64,000 bases of DNA from IMG/VR virus record IMGVR_UViG_3300042261_002385, positions 186,001-250,000 of that record. One strand, given 5' to 3'. Made by a program: the position numbers and the translations under genes. Each line of letters opens with the position of its first letter. The first letter of the stretch is position 1. Positions 8,915-54,915 of this stretch are shown piece by piece. The notes beneath the pieces were generated by a model that worked only from the letters and a program-made list of their open reading frames with translations, did not search any database and was not told the origin of the DNA.

Positions 8915-9910
8915 TCAATCGTAGTCATAAACATCGTAAGTTCCATCAGTATTCATAAACCTCCAATATGTTCCTTTTGGCTCATAGTTGTAAGCAACGT
9001 CTTTATGAACATAGCTAAAAGTGTCCATATATGGATATTCTTCATCTGGAAATTCAAAAACATCTAAAATTTTTACAGCTGTAAGAATTGTTTCTTCTTT
9101 TCCTCTTTTTATAAACTTAGTCAGACCTGTATTCATTTTTTTATAATAAAAATCGTTCTCATCAGCCCATCTTGTAAATTTATAATAGTCTTTATCATAC
9201 ACAAAATAAACTCTATCCATAATATTCCTACCTTCTAAGTCTGTCCAAAGAAGAGCTCTTCCCAATATAGCACCTTCTTCATCAAGTAAAACAAGAAGTT
9301 TGACACTTGGACAATATTGATAAAAACTGACATATGGAACATCATTCATACAAGAGTTCATAAGTGGATTCATACCATTATCATAATCATTAAAATGATA
9401 CAGTCTTGATGAATATCCTTTACCTATTTCACTTTTTTCCCAAATTTCAAATGTTGACTGACCACTTAGTGATTTCCATTGGTTTACAAATTTTTCTATC
9501 TGAAAATCGGTATACTTGTCACCAAAAAAGGACCTAATGAATCTACCGATATTCATTTCAGTTCTTGCAAATTGTAACAAGCTATTGTCAAGTGATGGAA
9601 AATTGATTTTTTTTATAAAGTTTATGATTTCTTCTTGGTCATCAATTTGATAAGTATCGGATACATACTTGCTTACTTTAGCAGAATCGGTGTAGACTAT
9701 CTTATCATCTGATTCAGATACAGAAATAAAAGTCCACTTACTTAAAACTTTATATTGAGAACTACCATAAGTTGCCATTAATTGAAAATCTTTAGAAATC
9801 GGAGAATCAATACTTTCAACTCTTTTAATAAAATCTTTACTAAAAAGAGTAGGTAATTTGACATCAGTCTTAGATTCTAAAATAAACTCAAAGTATCTGA
9901 ATAACTTCAT
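8915..9910 (-). CDS. Hypothetical protein with CTS-like N-terminus
   Basis: MKLFRYFEFILES; C-terminal SCMND...GRALLW...MDRVY...YPYMDTF region looks like a conserved phage domain of unknown function. Confidence 0.7.
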   Translation of the reverse strand: MKLFRYFEFILESKTDVKLPTLFSKDFIKRVESIDSPISKDFQLMATYGSSQYKVLSKWTFISVSESDDKIVYTDSAKVSKYVSDTYQIDDQEEIINFIKKINFPSLDNSLLQFARTEMNIGRFIRSFFGDKYTDFQIEKFVNQWKSLSGQSTFEIWEKSEIGKGYSSRLYHFNDYDNGMNPLMNSCMNDVPYVSFYQYCPSVKLLVLLDEEGAILGRALLWTDLEGRNIMDRVYFVYDKDYYKFTRWADENDFYYKKMNTGLTKFIKRGKEETILTAVKILDVFEFPDEEYPYMDTFSYVHKDVAYNYEPKGTYWRFMNTDGTYDVYDYD

Positions 9911-15748: not shown

Positions 15749-17464
15749 TTATTTATTGTTGTAGTTTTTAAAAGTGTAAACTTGACTTTCTTTCAATTCT
15801 GCCTGAAAGGATGTCATAATCTCTTTCAACGTCGTATTAAAGTCTCTCATATCAGCTCCGAATTCACCAAGTGAAGCATACATATTTTCACCTTCGAATT
15901 GTAAAGTTCTTTTAGCTAATCTTGCAATTTTCTCAGCAACAACTTTTCTTTTGTTTTTATCAGATATAACTTCAATACTCTCATTATATAATGGTCCGAA
16001 ATCAGACATAGTTTTTGAATATTTACCATAAAGATGCTCATAAACTTCTTCATAAAGAGCCTTTATTGATTTTTTAGCATCTACGTCCATTTTCTTGTCT
16101 AAGATATTTTTGATAAATTCGTCAGTGATTCCGATTCCTTTATCTTTTTCATCTTTTAATACTTTAAGTGATTTCTGAGCATTTTTAAATGCTTGTGTTA
16201 AATGTTCTTCAGCTGAAGTAATTTCTACATTTCTTGGTTGTTTAGAAAACTCTTTAGAAAATTCTTTTTCAAAAATTGAATAAGTTAAAATAGACTCTCT
16301 TACTTTTTGTCTTTGGACTCTTGCTACTTCTTCAGCATTCTTTTTTCTAATTCTTTCTTCATCTTCTGTTGAACCAGATTCACCGGCCAACCTAACTCCT
16401 TCAAAAGAAATAATCATACTTTGAAGAGCTTGAAGATTTTTAATCATAGTAGGGTAAAGAGATTTAAGTGGTTTAGCATTTTTTTCTTCTTCAGCTGAAA
16501 TTGCTATTTGGTCACCTTCTTTTTCACCAGAACTAGAAGTTACTACAGTGATGTCTGTGTTTTCAACATAAGTGATATCTATATCCTGAATAAAGATATT
16601 TACCACACCATTTCCTTCTAAGTTACCACCAAAAGCCATATGTAAATAAGCCAAACAGTCTTCTACAGTTGGATAAGGTTTACAAACCCAGATTGCTAAA
16701 ATAATTAGACCAGCCATAAGTAACATACCACCAATAGCAGCCATAGCTACAGGTCCTAAACCTAAAGTTAAACCAGCTAAACTAATACCAGCCACTTTTA
16801 AAACTCCTATAATAATTAAACCGATTGTTGTCTTTTTCATGATTTGAGAAACGACACCGTTAAATCTAGCATTTTTAATACCTAAAGCATGAGCTATTTT
16901 TTCAAATACACCATAATATTTTACTTCATCATCACCAATAGCGTATGGACTATCAGCTTCATTTAATTTAACTTGATTACCAACTGATTGTAATTTATCA
17001 GGAGTCACACCTGCTTCTTGCCAGTTTACAGCGGACTTAGCTTTTTGACACAAAATCTGCCAAATTCTTTGAAAATTAGGTCTATTATTTTCATCACATA
17101 AACCGTTTGAAACAATAAAGTCCTTGAAACCACTCAACATATCTTTGATTTTAGTCCAAGTTTTTGTTCCGATTTCTTTTATTTTATTGAAAATTGATCC
17201 TGCTAACTTACTTAAGGAAAAGTTTTTAAAGAAATTTACAACTCCGGTAAAAAATTTACTAATTGCATCTTTAACATTAGTATAAACATTTGATACTGCT
17301 TGTTTTCCTTTTTGGATAAGATTTCCGATAAACTCTTCAGTTATTAGCGATTCTAATGGATTTATTATATCTTCAGCCGTGATGTTTTGATCAGTCAAAA
17401 ACTGACATTCCATCAATTTAGCCTCGTATAGTTTGGAGTAATTTGTGAAACTTTGAACTCTCAT
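15749..17464 (-). CDS. Putative packaged protein with TM hairpin; C-terminal domain shared with 54912..57809
   Basis: MRVQSFTNYSKLYEA; long hydrophobic stretch TTIGLIIIG...ILAIWV; DKGIG and VVAEKIAR shared with the 966-aa ORF. Confidence 0.78.
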   Translation of the reverse strand: MRVQSFTNYSKLYEAKLMECQFLTDQNITAEDIINPLESLITEEFIGNLIQKGKQAVSNVYTNVKDAISKFFTGVVNFFKNFSLSKLAGSIFNKIKEIGTKTWTKIKDMLSGFKDFIVSNGLCDENNRPNFQRIWQILCQKAKSAVNWQEAGVTPDKLQSVGNQVKLNEADSPYAIGDDEVKYYGVFEKIAHALGIKNARFNGVVSQIMKKTTIGLIIIGVLKVAGISLAGLTLGLGPVAMAAIGGMLLMAGLIILAIWVCKPYPTVEDCLAYLHMAFGGNLEGNGVVNIFIQDIDITYVENTDITVVTSSSGEKEGDQIAISAEEEKNAKPLKSLYPTMIKNLQALQSMIISFEGVRLAGESGSTEDEERIRKKNAEEVARVQRQKVRESILTYSIFEKEFSKEFSKQPRNVEITSAEEHLTQAFKNAQKSLKVLKDEKDKGIGITDEFIKNILDKKMDVDAKKSIKALYEEVYEHLYGKYSKTMSDFGPLYNESIEVISDKNKRKVVAEKIARLAKRTLQFEGENMYASLGEFGADMRDFNTTLKEIMTSFQAELKESQVYTFKNYNNK

Positions 17465-17520: not shown

Positions 17521-19047
17521 TTAGATTTCCGCTTCTAATCTTTTAATTTCATCCATAACTTCTTTTAACTCTTCCTTTTTTTGCATCATAATTTTCTTAT
17601 TCTTCTTTCTATCTGCATAGACATCTTCCAACATTAGAAGTGTAGGTGACTTTCTTTTTTCAAAAACAACACCATTCACACAAAGAACATGTTTTTCTAA
17701 GTCAATAGGTCGACCATTTGTGCATTTAGATTTGTCTTTTTCATCTTGAAGACCAACAAAAGTTTCAGGAGCTATAAAGAATTGTCTTTGAGTAGTAGGA
17801 TATAGTGAAGCAAAGTCATAAGTAACACACCACTGGTTCATTCCAACTACAGGGTCTTTTACCCAACCACCAGCAATCGTTGATTCAGCATCACCTTTTT
17901 CATCTCTGAAAAGTACTATGTTATCCATTTCTCTAAAACGGTTTCTTAAAACTCCTTCTGTGATGGCTAGTGAACCAAGTGCGTTGTTCATTTGAGAAAC
18001 AACATCTACGATTCTGATTTGAGCAAGTGATGAAATCGCATAGATGATAGAGATATAATTTCTAGCTTCGTGAATTTTTTGAACCAGAACACTATCGACA
18101 GCGTTATAATACATAAAAGTCTCAAAATCATCTTCATATAGTTTTTGAAGAGATCCGGTATATTTAATCTTTTCAACACCAACGAGTTTATGAGAAACAA
18201 AATCTAGTGAAGAAGACTCTTTTACCTTAATTGAAGTGTCACAGATTTCATAAAGTTGCATGTAATCAAAAATCATTCTGTGAGCAGGCACTTCATATTC
18301 AGTTCCCCAAGCTTTTGTTATTCTTTTAGTCAGTGAAGAAACAGCTGGATCAATTTTGTATTCTCTACCATTAGCCCATTTACTAATTTTACGAGAACGG
18401 TTTACTAAATATAACCAGTCATATTGTAAGAAGTTCCAACCTGTAAGCAGTGGCATTTTTGGAACCATTTTGTAGAAGAAAGCATATAACATATCAAACT
18501 CATCTTCATATTTAATATATTTGAACTTATATTCTGTTCCAAATTTTTCAAAATATTTATTAGTATTATTTAATATACGTTCTTGCATGTCTTCTGGCAT
18601 GTCTTTCAGACCCAAAAGAATGATTTTATCATCATAGACTATTGAAATAGAAAGAATTTGAGTAATAGCTCCTTCTTTTACAACGTTTCCGGCAGCATCT
18701 TTAACATCGGCTGCTTCAGGAAAACCATCAATAATCTCAGTCTCAATATCTATAAAGTATATCTTTGGTAGATTGAATTCAAATATCTCTTGTTTTTCTT
18801 TTTCCGGTAGTGAGTCTAAAAATTCATAAGTAGCATATCTATCTGGTTGGTTTACTTCTATTTGCTTAACGGATTTTCCATCCCAAGATCGAAACGAGGG
18901 GTGTCGTTGTGGATCTGTATCCTCACAAGCAACATATTTCATAGGATTATCCCAGTTATAATATTTGAGTTTTATATCACCTGTCTTATCAACATAGCTG
19001 ACTACAAGTTTTTTACTATTTGATAGATATTGAGTTTCTACAAGCAC
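17521..19047 (-). CDS. gp43: Family B DNA polymerase, N-terminal half (gp43A-like split polymerase)
   Basis: ExoI DIETE, ExoII GWNFLQYD, ExoIII YNAVD, motif A DFASLYP; stops in the fingers, lacking KxxxNSxYG and YGDTDS. Confidence 0.9.
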   Translation of the reverse strand: MLVETQYLSNSKKLVVSYVDKTGDIKLKYYNWDNPMKYVACEDTDPQRHPSFRSWDGKSVKQIEVNQPDRYATYEFLDSLPEKEKQEIFEFNLPKIYFIDIETEIIDGFPEAADVKDAAGNVVKEGAITQILSISIVYDDKIILLGLKDMPEDMQERILNNTNKYFEKFGTEYKFKYIKYEDEFDMLYAFFYKMVPKMPLLTGWNFLQYDWLYLVNRSRKISKWANGREYKIDPAVSSLTKRITKAWGTEYEVPAHRMIFDYMQLYEICDTSIKVKESSSLDFVSHKLVGVEKIKYTGSLQKLYEDDFETFMYYNAVDSVLVQKIHEARNYISIIYAISSLAQIRIVDVVSQMNNALGSLAITEGVLRNRFREMDNIVLFRDEKGDAESTIAGGWVKDPVVGMNQWCVTYDFASLYPTTQRQFFIAPETFVGLQDEKDKSKCTNGRPIDLEKHVLCVNGVVFEKRKSPTLLMLEDVYADRKKNKKIMMQKKEELKEVMDEIKRLEAEI

Positions 19048-19109: not shown

Positions 19110-19140
19110 TTTGTTTATCAAATAAAAATAATTATATTTG
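19110..19140 (+). promoter_or_regulatory. Bacteroidota housekeeping-sigma promoter (-33/-7)
   Basis: TTTG (19110-19113), 19-nt spacer, TATATTTG (19133-19140). Confidence 0.7.
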
Positions 19141-19170
19141 TAGAAATTAATCTTTCTAAAAAATAAAACT

Positions 19171-19446
19171 ATGAAAACACTACTTAAATTTTACCTTAAA
19201 AACTTCAAATTTATTCATCATCTCTTTTTTATTGTTTTGGTTTTTTCAACACTAAAATTACTATCATTTGCGCCATTTTTAGGATGGATTTTTGATGTGA
19301 TTTTTCAACCAGGATTAATTGGTCTGTTTTTTCAAATTGGTATTTTAGCTTATTGTTTTAAAGTGAATCCAATTATTTTAGAACAAGCTGGTCTTACAGA
19401 CGACTACATGAAAGAAGAACTCGAAAATTTAGACAAAAAAAAATAG
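19171..19446 (+). CDS. Small 2-TM membrane protein, copy 1
   Basis: MKTLLKFYLKNFK; hydrophobic core; C-terminal AGLTDDYMKEELENLDKKK. Confidence 0.85.
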   Translation: MKTLLKFYLKNFKFIHHLFFIVLVFSTLKLLSFAPFLGWIFDVIFQPGLIGLFFQIGILAYCFKVNPIILEQAGLTDDYMKEELENLDKKK

Positions 19447-19472
19447 TAAGTGAATAACTTACTATTTTTTTT
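19432..19472. terminator. Bidirectional terminator, copy 1
   Basis: A-run-TAGTAAGT-gaata-ACTTACTA-T-run between convergent genes. Confidence 0.8.
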
Positions 19473-19490
19473 TATTGAAAATAATTTTAA

Positions 19491-20144
19491 TTATTTACCA
19501 GTCACTGCACCATAACCGACTCTTCCACATAAAAGTGTCGCTGCAGTAGCTACAGCGGTTGACCAACAAGCCACAAATATACTAAAACCAGTTCCAGCAG
19601 CAGCTGCAACTGCTATTGCGCCTGCAGCAATCTTAATTAGAGCTCCAAGAGCTACAAGAACAATAACTAAAGCAACTATTATCGCCAAAAATTTACCAGC
19701 TAATCCTAAAGCTTTCAAAATCTTTTGTCCCAAAGTTTGAGCATTTTCATTTATTGCAATAAGTCTAGATTCGTATAACGGTGTTCCGTATTTTGTTCTA
19801 GAAATACTTACAGAATCTTGAATCAATTCTTTTAATTCTTCTTCAGTTCCTTCTGGAGCTTGAGCAGCAGCTGTATCTGGATTAAAAGTTTCCATTTTTT
19901 GTTTCAATTCCTCAAGATCTCCTTCTGGTAAGGCATTTATTAGTTCTTGAGCTTTAGCAAATTTTCCACTATTAGCCGCGTCTTCTACAACTTTTTTGGT
20001 AGCCTCAGCCATTTCTACAGCTTTTTTATTTTTCCAACCAGAATACCACTTACTGATTTTTGAAAAGATGTTACCTTCTCCCCATAACCAACCTTCATTG
20101 GTTGTATTATAGTTAAAACTTTCGAATGTTTTTACGTATTTCAT
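19491..20144 (-). CDS. CTS-tagged protein with hydrophobic C-terminus, copy 1
   Basis: MKYVKTFESFNYNTTNEG; KYGTPLYES...INE before a ~65-aa hydrophobic tail. Confidence 0.82.
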   Translation of the reverse strand: MKYVKTFESFNYNTTNEGWLWGEGNIFSKISKWYSGWKNKKAVEMAEATKKVVEDAANSGKFAKAQELINALPEGDLEELKQKMETFNPDTAAAQAPEGTEEELKELIQDSVSISRTKYGTPLYESRLIAINENAQTLGQKILKALGLAGKFLAIIVALVIVLVALGALIKIAAGAIAVAAAAGTGFSIFVACWSTAVATAATLLCGRVGYGAVTGK

Positions 20145-20214
20145 AATTTTTTTTTTTTTTTATAATGTATATATTCTATTTAAAAAATCATTTTTTGTAT
20201 TTTTATCAAATATT

Positions 20215-20244
20215 TTTGAATTAATAGAAATTTGTTTATGTTTG
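20215..20244 (+). promoter_or_regulatory. Bacteroidota housekeeping-sigma promoter (-33/-7)
   Basis: TTTG (20215-20218), 18-nt spacer, TATGTTTG (20237-20244). Confidence 0.65.
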
Positions 20245-20274
20245 TAGAAATTAATCTTTTTTAAAAATCAGACT

Positions 20275-20553
20275 ATGAAAACATTACTTAAATTTTACCT
20301 CAAAAACTTTAAAGTTATACATCACTCTTTTTTTATACTACTAGTCTTTTCGACTTTTAAATTGTTTACTTTTGTTCCAGGTTTTTTTGGACAAACATTT
20401 CAGATGATTCTAAGTCATAATATATTAGGATTTTGTTTTCAGATTGCAATTTTAGTTTATTGTTTTAAAGTAAATCCAATTATGTTAGAAAGAGCTGGTC
20501 TTACTGACGACTACATGAAAGAACAACTAGAAAATTTAGACAAAAAAAAATAG
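20275..20553 (+). CDS. Small 2-TM membrane protein, copy 2
   Basis: Clear paralog of 19171..19446 with a diverged central loop. Confidence 0.85.
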   Translation: MKTLLKFYLKNFKVIHHSFFILLVFSTFKLFTFVPGFFGQTFQMILSHNILGFCFQIAILVYCFKVNPIMLERAGLTDDYMKEQLENLDKKK

Positions 20554-20578
20554 TAAGTGAGAACTTACTATTTTTTTT
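20543..20578. terminator. Bidirectional terminator, copy 2
   Basis: A-run-TAGTAAGT-gaga-ACTTACTA-T-run. Confidence 0.8.
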
Positions 20579-20613
20579 ATTTGAAATAATTTTAATTATT
20601 CGACTAATTATGC

Positions 20614-21237
20614 TTATTTATTATCAAAAGCTGTATTCGTTCCAGAGCCCACTTCAAGTTCGGAACCATGCATAGACCTAACGACAAGGAAAGCTAAACC
20701 AGCAACAATTAAAGACCCAAAAACAACAAATCCAATCACGGCTGATGCAGCAACCACAGCGAGTATCGACGAAATAGAGACGATTAAAATTGTAATCAAT
20801 GTTAAATACTCAAAATTTAAACCAAGCCATTTAAGAACTCTTTTAGCTAAACTTTCAGAGGATTCATTAAGCGACATTTGATAAGATTCGTAAAGTGCGC
20901 TTCCGTATTTTGTCATTCTCATCTCATTAGCCGTTCCAATAGTTGCTTCAACCTCCGCTGCGCCTTCTTTGTCTTCTACCTTACCATCTGGTGTCCATTT
21001 TGCTACCCAATCTTTAAGATATAATTGTGACTTTTCAGGTAATTTCTTAAACACATCAACAGCCTTTTGAACTATCCCCGGGTTCTTTTCCAATTTTTGT
21101 GTTAGCATATCTGCTGCTTTTTTAGCCTGTTGATTTTTCCAGTTGTTCCACTTGTCTCTAACAGATCTGAAAAAATCCATTAATCCCTCATTTGTTGGGT
21201 CGTAGTTGAAACTTTCGAATGTTTTTACGTATTTCAT
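20614..21237 (-). CDS. CTS-tagged protein with hydrophobic C-terminus, copy 2
   Basis: MKYVKTFESFNYDPTNEG; KYGSALYES...LNE before a hydrophobic hairpin. Confidence 0.82.
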   Translation of the reverse strand: MKYVKTFESFNYDPTNEGLMDFFRSVRDKWNNWKNQQAKKAADMLTQKLEKNPGIVQKAVDVFKKLPEKSQLYLKDWVAKWTPDGKVEDKEGAAEVEATIGTANEMRMTKYGSALYESYQMSLNESSESLAKRVLKWLGLNFEYLTLITILIVSISSILAVVAASAVIGFVVFGSLIVAGLAFLVVRSMHGSELEVGSGTNTAFDNK

Positions 21238-21362
21238 AAATTTTTTTTTTTTATAATGTATATATTTATATTAAAAACTCATTTTTTGTATTTTTTGAAA
21301 ACTGTAAAAAATTATTTTTTTAAAATATAACATATATAAAAAATTTAAAAAACTATTTTTTA

Positions 21363-21884
21363 TCAAAAGTCACAATCATAGTAATCTAAAATAATACCAT
21401 TTCTTTTGTTAATGAAAAGCAATTCATCTCTTCTTACTAATTGATATTCATAGTGTCTACCTGTTTTGAAAAGCGTTCTAATAAAGTCAATACCCTGACC
21501 GAAGTTGACAACTCTTTCATCAACCATCAAACATAGTATCTTAGTATCATCTTCATTTGAATAGTTTACTACTTCATTATCATGATCTTTTTCTAAACCT
21601 TTTTTCCCGTAACAGATGAATTTTGTAGTCAATTCCTCAGTATAGTCCGATATAATCTCTTTCGACAAATAAGCATTTGGTTTGTAAGTTATTACAATAT
21701 CATCACCGGCTTGAACATTTAAATCTTGTTCTTTTAGATAAAGTCTTATCCAGAAATAAATTTTTTGTTCTTCAACAATTTTCGAAGACGACACCTGTTC
21801 AACCTCATCAGGTAAACCGTCCGTGTCAATTTTTCTAATAGATTCTAAAAGTTGTTCTCTATAGTCTGTTTTTGCTATGTTCAT
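21363..21884 (-). CDS. Hypothetical protein
   Basis: 173-aa ORF directly downstream of thyA. Confidence 0.7.
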   Translation of the reverse strand: MNIAKTDYREQLLESIRKIDTDGLPDEVEQVSSSKIVEEQKIYFWIRLYLKEQDLNVQAGDDIVITYKPNAYLSKEIISDYTEELTTKFICYGKKGLEKDHDNEVVNYSNEDDTKILCLMVDERVVNFGQGIDFIRTLFKTGRHYEYQLVRRDELLFINKRNGIILDYYDCDF

Positions 21885-54375: not shown

Positions 54376-54915
54376 TTACTTTTTCATTTGAATTTCTTGA
54401 GTGTCTTTTTTCAATTCCTTCTCAGTATCAATCATAAGTTTTTTGTGTTCAGCCATCAGTTTTTGAAGTTCCTTTGACTTTTCTGCTAAAATCTTTTGCA
54501 AATCACCTAGTTTTACGTCAATTTCTTTTAATTGAGTATCTAATTTTTTAATACTCGCTGGATCTTTTGTCAATCCCTTCTCCTGAACATATTTATCTTT
54601 ATTAATATTAGCATCAACTCTTGCTTGGCTATTTCCGTTGATTTCATTTTGAATTCTACAAATTTTAAGATATTCTACTAAGAATCTATTTTTATTCTCT
54701 TTTTCAGGAAACATTTTCTTTAACTCTTGTTCTATTTCTAAATCATTCTTTGTAGAGTTATAAAGCTGGTCTATTTTAGGTTTTTTTTCTCGATACTCTT
54801 TTAAATCAGATTCTACATCATTCAAGCTTTGTTTAGCCAATTTTTCATCTGGTCTATCGGTTGTTGATATAGCTAATACTTCTTTAAAAAAATCATATTT
54901 TCTTAGATATTTCAT
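54376..54915 (-). CDS. CTS-tagged coiled-coil protein
   Basis: MKYLRKYDFFKE; long coiled coil. Confidence 0.75.
   Translation of the reverse strand: MKYLRKYDFFKEVLAISTTDRPDEKLAKQSLNDVESDLKEYREKKPKIDQLYNSTKNDLEIEQELKKMFPEKENKNRFLVEYLKICRIQNEINGNSQARVDANINKDKYVQEKGLTKDPASIKKLDTQLKEIDVKLGDLQKILAEKSKELQKLMAEHKKLMIDTEKELKKDTQEIQMKK

What the first reader, a model, noticed from the sequence alone, without database searches (positions are those of the whole stretch)
19110..21296. Duplicated convergent pair resembling a packaged membrane effector and its immunity protein
Seen: a ~1.1-kb unit repeated twice. Each has (+) a ~91-aa 2-TM protein behind a host-type promoter, a bidirectional terminator, and (-) a tagged protein behind AATATATA whose last 65-80 aa, after a KYGxxLYES...[IL]NE site, are strongly hydrophobic. 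Tag, processing site and small-protein ends are conserved; the hydrophobic tails and the small-protein central loop diverge. Established: pore-forming colicins end in a hydrophobic hairpin and their membrane immunity genes lie convergently on the opposite strand. Inference: a virion-delivered membrane peptide neutralised by a cognate early protein, a diversifying self/non-self or superinfection-competition module. This is my best candidate for an undescribed system.
Basis: partly seen in the sequence, partly recalled or inferred. Interest (0 to 1): 0.82.

Follow-up and report, generated by a model that had tools for sequence, protein, structure and literature searches.

The report
Paired membrane-protein genes in huge phage
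Two tandem copies of a previously undescribed two-gene membrane module sit in a 436-kb freshwater phage: a tagged protein with a rapidly shuffled hydrophobic tail and a small two-helix partner on the opposite strand. A Bacteroidota bacterium has captured the small partner alone, which suggests that it protects cells, but no experiment has tested this.

Summary
Two ~1.1-kb units (window 19110-21296) each hold a 91/92-aa two-helix membrane protein (SP) and a convergent 217/207-aa protein (BP).

**The two genes**
- SP sits behind a Bacteroidota-type promoter.
- BP sits behind AATATATA. It has an N-terminal tag, a helical domain and a hydrophobic tail.
- A bidirectional terminator hairpin separates them.

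**What I added**
- The pair is a conserved, mobile module. 21 of 25 BP loci and 7 of 8 SP loci show the partner.
- There are two unrelated SP types, and four BP paralogues in this genome.
- About 10% of the phage's genes carry the tag, which resembles the T4 capsid-targeting sequence.
- A hydrophobic-Asn-Glu motif recurs after the tag and before the tail.
- The tail is a recombination-swapped cassette that changes while SP stays identical, so strict cognate pairing is not supported.
- An intact SP under purifying selection sits alone in a Bacteroidota chromosome island.

**What failed**
- There is no sequence or fold similarity to colicins, T4 Imm, holins or any other described family.

**Reading**
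My best reading (about 0.4) is a membrane-inserting phage protein plus an early protective or exclusion partner, analogous to T4 Imm/tape measure or P22 SieA/ejection proteins. Virion packaging and cleavage are inferred only.

The parts
19110..19140 (+). Bacteroidota-type promoter of small gene A (TTTG, 19-nt spacer, TATATTTG)
   Evidence: Read from the sequence. The pattern scan places it 30 nt before the ATG, and the same arrangement precedes small gene B and the type-B small gene elsewhere in the genome.
19171..19446 (+). SP-A: 91-aa protein with two predicted membrane helices, a basic N-terminus (FYLKNFKxIHH) and a charged C-terminus (AGLTDDYMKEELE..KKK)
   Evidence: family alignment; dN/dS 0.16-0.26.
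19435..19473 (.). Bidirectional terminator-like hairpin (A9, 8-bp stem, loop, T9). It overlaps the KKK and stop codons of SP-A.
   Evidence: Folds on both strands at -17.8 and -19.6 kcal/mol, z -6.3 and -7.1.
19491..20144 (-). BP-A: 217-aa tagged protein. Tag at residues 1-11 (20112-20144); TNE at residues 15-17; helical domain; KYG..INE at residues 118-133 (19746-19793); hydrophobic tail at residues 141-217 (19494-19724).
   Evidence: AF2 model is helical, with pLDDT 70-85 for residues 25-140.
20168..20175 (-). AATATATA element 31 nt upstream of the BP-A start codon
   Evidence: 126 of 508 genes in the genome have this octamer within 60 nt upstream.
20215..20244 (+). Bacteroidota-type promoter of small gene B (TTTG, 18-nt spacer, TATGTTTG)
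20275..20553 (+). SP-B: 92-aa two-helix protein, 72% identical to SP-A. The differences are concentrated at residues 33-58.
20543..20578 (.). Bidirectional terminator-like hairpin of unit B
   Evidence: z -4.9 and -6.5.
20614..21237 (-). BP-B: 207-aa tagged protein, 34% identical to BP-A. Hydrophobic region at residues 137-190 (tail-coding DNA 20617-20829).
21259..21266 (-). AATATATA element 29 nt upstream of the BP-B start codon. The conserved upstream stretch runs to about 21296.

Best explanation
Each unit is one copy of a conserved, mobile two-gene inner-membrane module. The module is found only in a clade of freshwater huge phages whose hosts are probably Bacteroidota.

The large protein (BP) is made from the phage's own promoter class (AATATATA). 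It starts with the N-terminal peptide that about one in ten proteins of this phage share. It continues as a helical cytoplasmic domain and ends in two or three hydrophobic helices. The DNA encoding those helices is swapped between alleles by recombination.

The small protein (SP) is made from a host-type promoter, so presumably earlier. It sits in the inner membrane as a two-helix hairpin with both ends in the cytoplasm.

I propose that the BP tail inserts into the inner membrane. It would do so either when delivered from the virion or when BP is made late. I propose that SP neutralises this insertion, protecting the infected cell and excluding related phages. This is how T4 Imm acts on the membrane part of the tape measure protein, and how P22 SieA acts on ejection proteins.

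- Shown: the anatomy, the linkage, the promoter dichotomy, tail shuffling, and SP surviving alone in a bacterium.
- Inferred: membrane activity of BP, antagonism by SP, packaging through the tag, and cleavage at the Asn-Glu motifs.
For: **Linkage**
- 21 of 25 distinct BP genes have an opposite-strand two-helix ORF of 65-114 aa within 131 nt. Three of the four exceptions are cut by contig ends.
- 7 of 8 contexts approached from the SP side show a convergent BP.
- Two unrelated SP types (hhalign probability 9%) pair with the same BP family.

**Regulation and expression**
- All three SP genes in this genome have TTTG-N18/19-TAnnTTTG 29-30 nt upstream. The BP genes have AATATATA.
- RNA-library contigs from three runs lie only over the BP genes.

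**SP has value on its own**
- An intact SP, 87% identical to phage copies and with dN/dS 0.14-0.19, lies in a low-GC island of a contig.
- That contig also carries trigger factor, AhpC and T9SS-tagged PhoD.
- No other phage-like gene is present on it.

**Tag and motif**
- The tag occurs at 50 of 508 N-termini and once internally.
- Positions 4, 7 and 10 are hydrophobic. In the T4 CTS, residues 4 and 7 target and residues 8 and 10 direct processing (PMC9026906).
- [LIVT]NE[EGN] follows the tag in 54 of 60 family representatives. [LIV]NE precedes the tail in 26 of 60, against 1-2 of 60 in control windows.
- There is a weak T4-type prohead protease match.

**Precedents**
-.
Against: - There is no experimental datum of any kind, and no cultured phage carries the module.
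- SP does not track the tail. Identical SP genes sit beside tails only 51-55% identical, so any recognition must be broad or aimed at conserved parts.
- One BP paralogue (genome 429194-429772) has no membrane partner.
- A protein with a 60-80 aa hydrophobic tail would be expected to enter the membrane of the producing cell rather than a prohead.
- Across all tagged proteins, [LI]xE after the tag is not enriched (14 of 50 against 122 of 458).
- The tag also sits on enzyme-like proteins.
- The protease match is below Pfam's cut-off (22.5 against 27 bits).
- The RNA evidence is contigs only, and DNA carry-over cannot be excluded.
- The tail dN/dS of 0.84-1.04 also fits a loosely constrained membrane anchor.
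Confidence: 0.4

Rival explanations
1. Lysis-timing pair. BP, or SP itself, is a holin-like hole former, and the other protein is its antiholin. Early SP would hold back a late membrane-damaging BP until lysis.
For: SP has the size and predicted topology of a class II holin: two helices and a charged C-terminus. The early/late promoter split fits an inhibitor made before its target. The sizes recall T4 T and RI (my own knowledge).
Against: - No holin, antiholin or endolysin family hit.
- The neighbours are DNA-metabolism genes, not an endolysin.
- This genome holds four BP paralogues, three of them with an SP partner, at three sites.
- The tail is recombination-shuffled.
- An antiholin alone would be useless to a bacterium, yet SP is maintained alone under purifying selection.
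Confidence: 0.13
2. Non-antagonistic membrane complex. BP is a tail-anchored adaptor whose conserved N-terminal region recruits something to the inner membrane, for example proheads or other tagged cargo. SP is its assembly partner. The tail would be only an anchor and would drift freely.
For: - Residues 1-40 of BP are the most conserved part, while the tail has dN/dS near 1.
- SP's conserved parts are its cytoplasmic ends.
- SP does not co-vary with the tail.
- T4 proheads assemble on the membrane (my own knowledge).
Against: - It does not explain why a bacterium keeps SP alone.
- It does not explain why two unrelated SP families serve the same BP family.
- In the tail, dS is far above that of the flanks (0.42-0.50 against 0-0.17). 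That indicates import of foreign alleles, not mere drift.
Confidence: 0.17
3. One reading: a colicin-like, virion-delivered killing peptide with a cognate immunity protein, the two diversifying together as a self/non-self system.
For: Convergent arrangement with a separate promoter for the small gene, as for the immunity genes of pore-forming colicins (my own knowledge of colicin operons). Between units A and B, both the tail and the SP centre differ.
Against: - No colicin pore domain or immunity family hit, and no fold match.
- In two close comparisons SP is identical in DNA while the tails are 51% and 55% identical. Specificity is therefore not cognate at that scale.
Confidence: 0.07

Closest known systems
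T4 Imm and the tape measure protein gp29 (superinfection exclusion)
   Same: A small early phage inner-membrane protein acts on a membrane-inserting, virion-delivered phage protein. [quoted passage not shown]
   Different: No sequence similarity: no Pfam hit at E<=1. Here the two genes are adjacent and convergent, and the putative target is a small non-structural-looking protein present in several copies. Binding and exclusion are untested.
P22 SieA and the ejection proteins gp16/gp20
   Same: An inner-membrane exclusion protein acts against membrane-active virion proteins that are highly mosaic and variable. SieA types less than 30% identical show the same specificity. This parallels the two SP types and the lack of co-variation seen here (PMC10883804).
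   Different: SieA is prophage-expressed and is not linked to its targets. There is no homology. Here the phage looks lytic and huge, and the BP role in DNA entry is only a conjecture.
T4 internal proteins with their capsid targeting sequence
   Same: A short N-terminal peptide is shared by otherwise unrelated, fast-evolving small proteins in hypervariable genome slots. Hydrophobic residues occupy positions 4 and 7. A hydrophobic-x-Glu motif follows, and a gp21-like protease may be present (PMC3012670).
   Different: - About 50 proteins carry the tag here, against a handful in T4.
- Some tagged proteins are enzyme-like.
- T4 internal proteins have no membrane helices.
- Packaging and cleavage are not shown.
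Pore-forming colicins with opposite-strand immunity genes
   Same: A hydrophobic C-terminal helical region, and a small membrane protein gene convergent on the other strand with its own promoter.
   Different: No ten-helix pore domain, no receptor or translocation domains, and no immunity-family match. SP has two helices, not three or four.
Mobile regulatory cassettes of T4-type hyperplastic regions (promoter-early stem-loops)
   Same: Nearly identical promoter, terminator and gene-end sequences flank diverged cores, and the module moves between genome slots. The comparison rests on my own knowledge of that literature.
   Different: Here the conserved flanks include coding sequence (the tag and the SP ends). 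I did not test for recombination intermediates.

Membership tests
Pore-forming colicin | C-terminal ten-helix pore-forming domain (Pfam Colicin) | tested here: not met
   No Pfam match at E<=1. The best PDB and BFVD fold matches have E>0.6 and TM<0.3.
Pore-forming colicin | Immunity gene downstream on the opposite strand with its own promoter | tested here: met
   Convergent small ORF at 45-61 nt, with a TTTG/TAnnTTTG promoter. This is a resemblance in gene arrangement only.
Colicin immunity protein | Membership of a known immunity family; three or four membrane helices | tested here: not met
   No Pfam, NCBIfam, PHROG or PADLOC match. Two hydrophobic helices by hydropathy.
T4-type capsid targeting sequence proteins | Short N-terminal peptide shared by otherwise unrelated proteins | tested here: met
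   50 of 508 N-termini match the motif, with one internal match in 122,000 residues. 18 of the 20 tagged proteins scanned have no Pfam family at E<=0.001 and over its cut-off.
T4-type capsid targeting sequence proteins | Removal by a gp21-type prohead protease after hydrophobic-x-Glu | tested here: inconclusive
   [LIVT]NE[EGN] follows the tag in 54 of 60 BP relatives, and there are FINES-type tags. Across all tagged proteins there is no enrichment of [LI]xE. The PF03420 match scores 22.5 bits, below the 27-bit cut-off.
T4-type capsid targeting sequence proteins | Presence of the mature protein in the virion | not testable with these tools
   There is no cultured relative, and no match in 50,697 GenBank phage records.
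Superinfection exclusion proteins (T4 Imm, P22 SieA) | Sequence membership (e.g. the Pfam family of T4 Imm) | tested here: not met
   No Pfam or PHROG match for SP of either type.
Superinfection exclusion proteins (T4 Imm, P22 SieA) | Small inner-membrane protein expressed before or independently of late genes | tested here: met
   Predicted two-helix hairpin. Host-type promoter on all three SP genes, against AATATATA on the BP genes. These are predictions only.
Superinfection exclusion proteins (T4 Imm, P22 SieA) | Blocks genome entry of related phages | not testable with these tools
   The only indirect support is an SP kept alone under purifying selection in a Bacteroidota chromosome.
Holin/antiholin | Known holin family, next to an endolysin, late expression | tested here: not met
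   No family match. The neighbours are polB, ThyA, Fpg/Nei and a helicase. SP has a host-type promoter.
Diversity-generating retroelement target | Reverse transcriptase and a template repeat matching the variable 3' region | tested here: not met
   No RVT_1 match in the genome. No second copy of either tail-coding segment.

The most novel reading that the evidence does not exclude
Huge Bacteroidota phages may use a T4-like but far more widely deployed capsid-targeting and processing tag, carried on about a tenth of their genes. With it they would load the head with diverse cargo, including a family of proteins that release a recombination-shuffled membrane-inserting peptide on infection. Each such gene travels with an early exclusion gene that blocks the peptide, and host bacteria have captured that exclusion gene as an anti-phage defence.
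Probability: 0.2. Interest if true: 0.85.

Novelty: new variant of a known kind. Interest (0 to 1): 0.62.

Why it matters
- Both protein families are undescribed: no Pfam, PHROG, NCBIfam or PADLOC match, and no match in GenBank phages. Yet they form a tightly conserved, multi-copy, mobile module in huge phages, whose biology is known almost only from sequence.
- If the small protein is an exclusion or immunity factor, the chromosomal copy in a Bacteroidota bacterium would be a phage-derived defence gene of a new family.
- The module would then be a linked version of the Imm/tape-measure and SieA/ejection-protein conflicts.
- The shared N-terminal tag, if it is a capsid-targeting signal, would give a sequence-only way to list the injected proteome of uncultured huge phages.
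- All of this can be tested with ordinary expression and mass-spectrometry experiments.

Tried and rejected
- **Family scans.** Pfam, PHROGs, NCBIfam and PADLOC scans of both BP, both SP and four further SP gave nothing above noise.
- **ESM Atlas.** Only unnamed viral clusters, all below 0.8.
- **GenBank phages.** tblastn of BP and SP gave no match, even in the two closest huge-phage records.
- **GTDB genomes.** Scanning 185,579 species genomes for SP gave no relative. My first attempt failed because the alignment was too diverse.
- **Structure.** The first AF2 model (26 sequences) had pLDDT 54.6 and I did not use it. The second (52 sequences, pLDDT 66) gave no fold match in PDB or BFVD.
- **Diversity-generating retroelement.** I considered this for the variable tail and rejected it: no reverse transcriptase and no template repeat.
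- **Co-divergence.** Tail and SP identities correlate (Spearman 0.71). I set this aside as evidence, because linked genes share history and close pairs break the correlation.
- **Cleavage site after every tag.** A general [LI]xE site after all tags is not supported.
- **Type A and type B small proteins.** Homology between them is not supported.
- **Record lookup.** Looking up the bacterial contig as a held genome failed, so I extended it by contig look-ups instead.
Full report
**Setting.** The window is bases 186001-250000 of a 436,265-base IMG/VR virus record with 31% G+C. Its nearest GenBank relatives are two uncultured huge phages of 635 and 642 kb. The finding lies between the N-terminal part of a family B DNA polymerase and a thymidylate synthase, in a DNA-metabolism region.

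**Observation.**
- Four ORFs form two tandem units: 19171-19446(+) 91 aa with 19491-20144(-) 217 aa, and 20275-20553(+) 92 aa with 20614-21237(-) 207 aa.
- The units align over about 1.1 kb in a mosaic. The small-gene promoter and 5' end, its 3' end with the terminator, and the large-gene 5' end with its upstream region are nearly identical. The cores have diverged.
- The small proteins (SP) are 72% identical and the large ones (BP) 34%.
- Hydropathy gives two helices in each SP, and a hydrophobic stretch of 54-67 residues at the end of each BP.
- The intergenic A9-stem-T9 hairpin folds well on both strands (z -4.9 to -7.1). It includes the KKK and stop codons of SP. The generic terminator scan missed it because the stem is AT-rich.

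**Promoters.**
- SP genes are preceded by TTTG, 18-19 nt, then TAnnTTTG. This is the Bacteroidota housekeeping promoter consensus (established knowledge). It ends 30 nt before the ATG.
- A third, unrelated small partner gene elsewhere in the genome has the same arrangement at 29 nt.
- BP genes are preceded by AATATATA at -31 and -29.
- That octamer occurs 169 times in the genome, and 126 of 508 called genes have it within 60 nt upstream. It falls into two spacing classes, so it is a genuine phage-wide signal.
- The two genes of a unit thus belong to different expression classes. That SP comes earlier is an inference.

**The tag.**
- Fifteen ORFs match a strict form of the N-terminal motif. Fifty of 508 match a relaxed form, against one internal match in 122,000 residues.
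- Position 4 is a hydrophobic residue (Leu, Ile or Val in 48 of 50) and position 7 is always Phe or Tyr. Position 10 is Phe in 42 of 50, and position 8 is Glu in 30.
- Of 20 tagged proteins scanned, 18 have no Pfam family at E<=0.001 and over its cut-off. One is weakly racemase-like and one has a glutamine amidotransferase domain.
- In T4, a 10-19-residue N-terminal propeptide targets diverse internal proteins to the prohead core. Residues 4 and 7 matter for targeting and residues 8 and 10 for processing (PMC9026906; PMC3012670). The T4 peptide is MKTYQEFIAE.
- Several tags here read ...QFINES or ...EFINES, which resembles FIAE.
- The genome has one weak match to the T4 prohead protease family: 22.5 bits against a cut-off of 27.
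- This makes a targeting role plausible but not shown. Across all tagged proteins, a hydrophobic-x-Glu motif after the tag is no more frequent than in untagged proteins.

**The BP family.**
- A word-indexed search found 36 relatives. An exhaustive profile search with the N-terminal domain found 79 clusters at 50% identity among 1.84 billion proteins.
- Of 60 full-length representatives, 58 end in a hydrophobic region.
- [LIVT]NE[EGN] lies at residues 9-25 in 54 of 60. [LIV]NE lies within 30 residues before the tail in 26 of 60, against 1-2 of 60 in control windows.
- Genome-wide, [LIV]NE[SGAE] is rare: 36 sites, 11 of them within the first 30 residues of a protein.
- The same short motif at two domain borders fits a protease site. 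It could also be a structural element.
- This genome has four BP paralogues: the two in the window, one at 355415-356005 and one at 429194-429772.

**Linkage.**
- In 25 distinct BP loci from the genome, IMG/VR and metagenomes, 21 have an opposite-strand two-helix ORF of 65-114 aa within 131 nt. Three of the four exceptions are cut by contig ends.
- Approached from the SP side, 7 of 8 contexts show a convergent BP of 201-238 aa.
- The partners fall into two families, type A and type B, with no detectable relationship. Type A carries FYLKNFKxIHH ... AGLTxxYMxEEL. Type B is 106-114 aa and can be convergent or divergent.
- The module occupies at least three genomic slots: polB-ThyA, deformylase-tRNA synthetase-like, and beside an NT5C gene.
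- Relatives have one unit where the window has two. The tandem A+B arrangement recurs in another assembly (L024).
- The two GenBank relatives carry other tagged genes in the same slot, and no module.

**Evolution of the tail.**
- Between L012 and L018 the SP genes are identical in DNA (dS 0). The BP N-domain has dS 0.17, and the tail dS 0.50 with dN/dS 0.84.
- Between unit B and L031 the corresponding figures are 0, 0.013 and 0.42, with tail dN/dS 0.86.
- Sliding-window identity shows a segment of about 200 nt at 42-80% identity, flanked by 95-100%.
- The tail is therefore exchanged by recombination, independently of SP.
- It is not a retroelement target.
- This contradicts strict cognate pairing of tail and SP. 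The same situation is reported for P22: mosaic, highly variable ejection proteins, and SieA types under 30% identical with the same specificity.

**An SP without BP, in a bacterium.**
- One SP (85 aa) lies on a 26-kb contig of a metagenome-assembled genome.
- About 10 kb away, that contig encodes trigger factor, AhpC, thioredoxin, a LysR regulator, a PhoD phosphatase with a T9SS sorting domain and a CHU_C protein. This marks it as a Bacteroidota chromosome.
- The SP sits in an island of 30-31% G+C, against 36.5% for the core genes.
- None of the island's other ORFs matches the phage genome or any fetched locus.
- The copy is intact, 87% identical to phage SPs, with dN/dS 0.14-0.19. The same arrangement occurs in a second sample (L071).
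- A gene that is useful alone to a bacterium fits a protective factor. It does not fit an antiholin or a BP-specific assembly partner.
- This is one case and therefore only suggestive.

**Expression.** Contigs from three RNA libraries lie only over the BP genes and not over SP or the neighbours. These are assembler contigs without strand, and DNA carry-over cannot be excluded.

**Structure.** With 52 sequences, AF2 gives a helical N-domain (pLDDT 70-85 for residues 25-140) and an unconfident tail. No match in PDB or BFVD reaches E<0.6.

**Interpretation.**
- The best-supported reading is a membrane-inserting phage protein with an early protective or exclusion partner.
- The closest worked examples are T4 Imm, which binds the membrane-active part of the tape measure protein, and P22 SieA acting on ejection proteins.
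- The families here are new, and the two genes are physically linked, which they are not in T4 or P22.
- Whether BP travels in the virion is open. I give the general reading 0.4. I give the holin/antiholin rival 0.13, a non-antagonistic membrane complex 0.17, and the strictly cognate colicin-like model 0.07.

Noticed in passing
whole genome; in the window e.g. 20168-20175(-), 21259-21266(-): AATATATA occurs 169 times in the genome, and 126 of 508 genes have it within 60 nt upstream. There are two spacing classes: the motif starts at -12/-13 (43 genes) or at -25 to -33. It precedes the ribonucleotide reductase, the 1965-aa ORF and the protease-like ORF alike.
   Followed up: partly
window 9982, 10577, 11263, 24732 (+), 8915-9910(-), 45818, 54376-54915(-) and about 40 genes outside the window: About 10% of genes start with M-[KR]-x-[LIV]-[KR]-x-[FY]-x-x-F. 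Nearly all are ORFans. Two are enzyme-like: one Asp/Glu racemase-like and one with a GATase domain.
   Followed up: partly
L076:9623-9880 (= L080:790-1047), contig CANEYV010000010.1: A homologue of the small protein sits alone in a low-GC island of a Bacteroidota chromosome. The island also holds duplicated pairs of signal-peptide proteins (266 and 274 aa), each followed by a 116-aa protein, and an AAA ATPase.
   Followed up: partly
window 15749-17464(-) and 17521-19047(-): The family B DNA polymerase stops after 508 aa. The next ORF (571 aa, in a different frame, 56 nt away) has no Pfam match. A relative's helicase gene carries Hint/intein domains (L012), so inteins or introns may interrupt replication genes here.
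   Followed up: no
genome 354977-356005 (outside the window); L014, L022, L069: A second module type: a BP paralogue lies divergent from a 109-aa two-helix protein of an unrelated family, next to peptide deformylase. In L069 the two module types lie back to back.
   Followed up: partly
L026, L069, L074, P0023 C-termini: A BP subgroup ends in a conserved hydrophilic motif (...RTGWESSGGPIM) after the hydrophobic tail. This suggests a functional C-terminal end beyond a simple anchor.
   Followed up: no
window 20176-20206 and 21271-21296; also upstream of other tagged genes: An A-run/short loop/T-run palindrome (AAAAAATGAxTTTTT) lies just upstream of the AATATATA element of several tagged genes. 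Together they form a promoter-plus-hairpin cassette that may act as the recombination substrate.
   Followed up: no
window 21363-21884(-): A 173-aa protein without any family match is the constant neighbour of thymidylate synthase in all relatives. It marks one border of the hypervariable slot.
   Followed up: no
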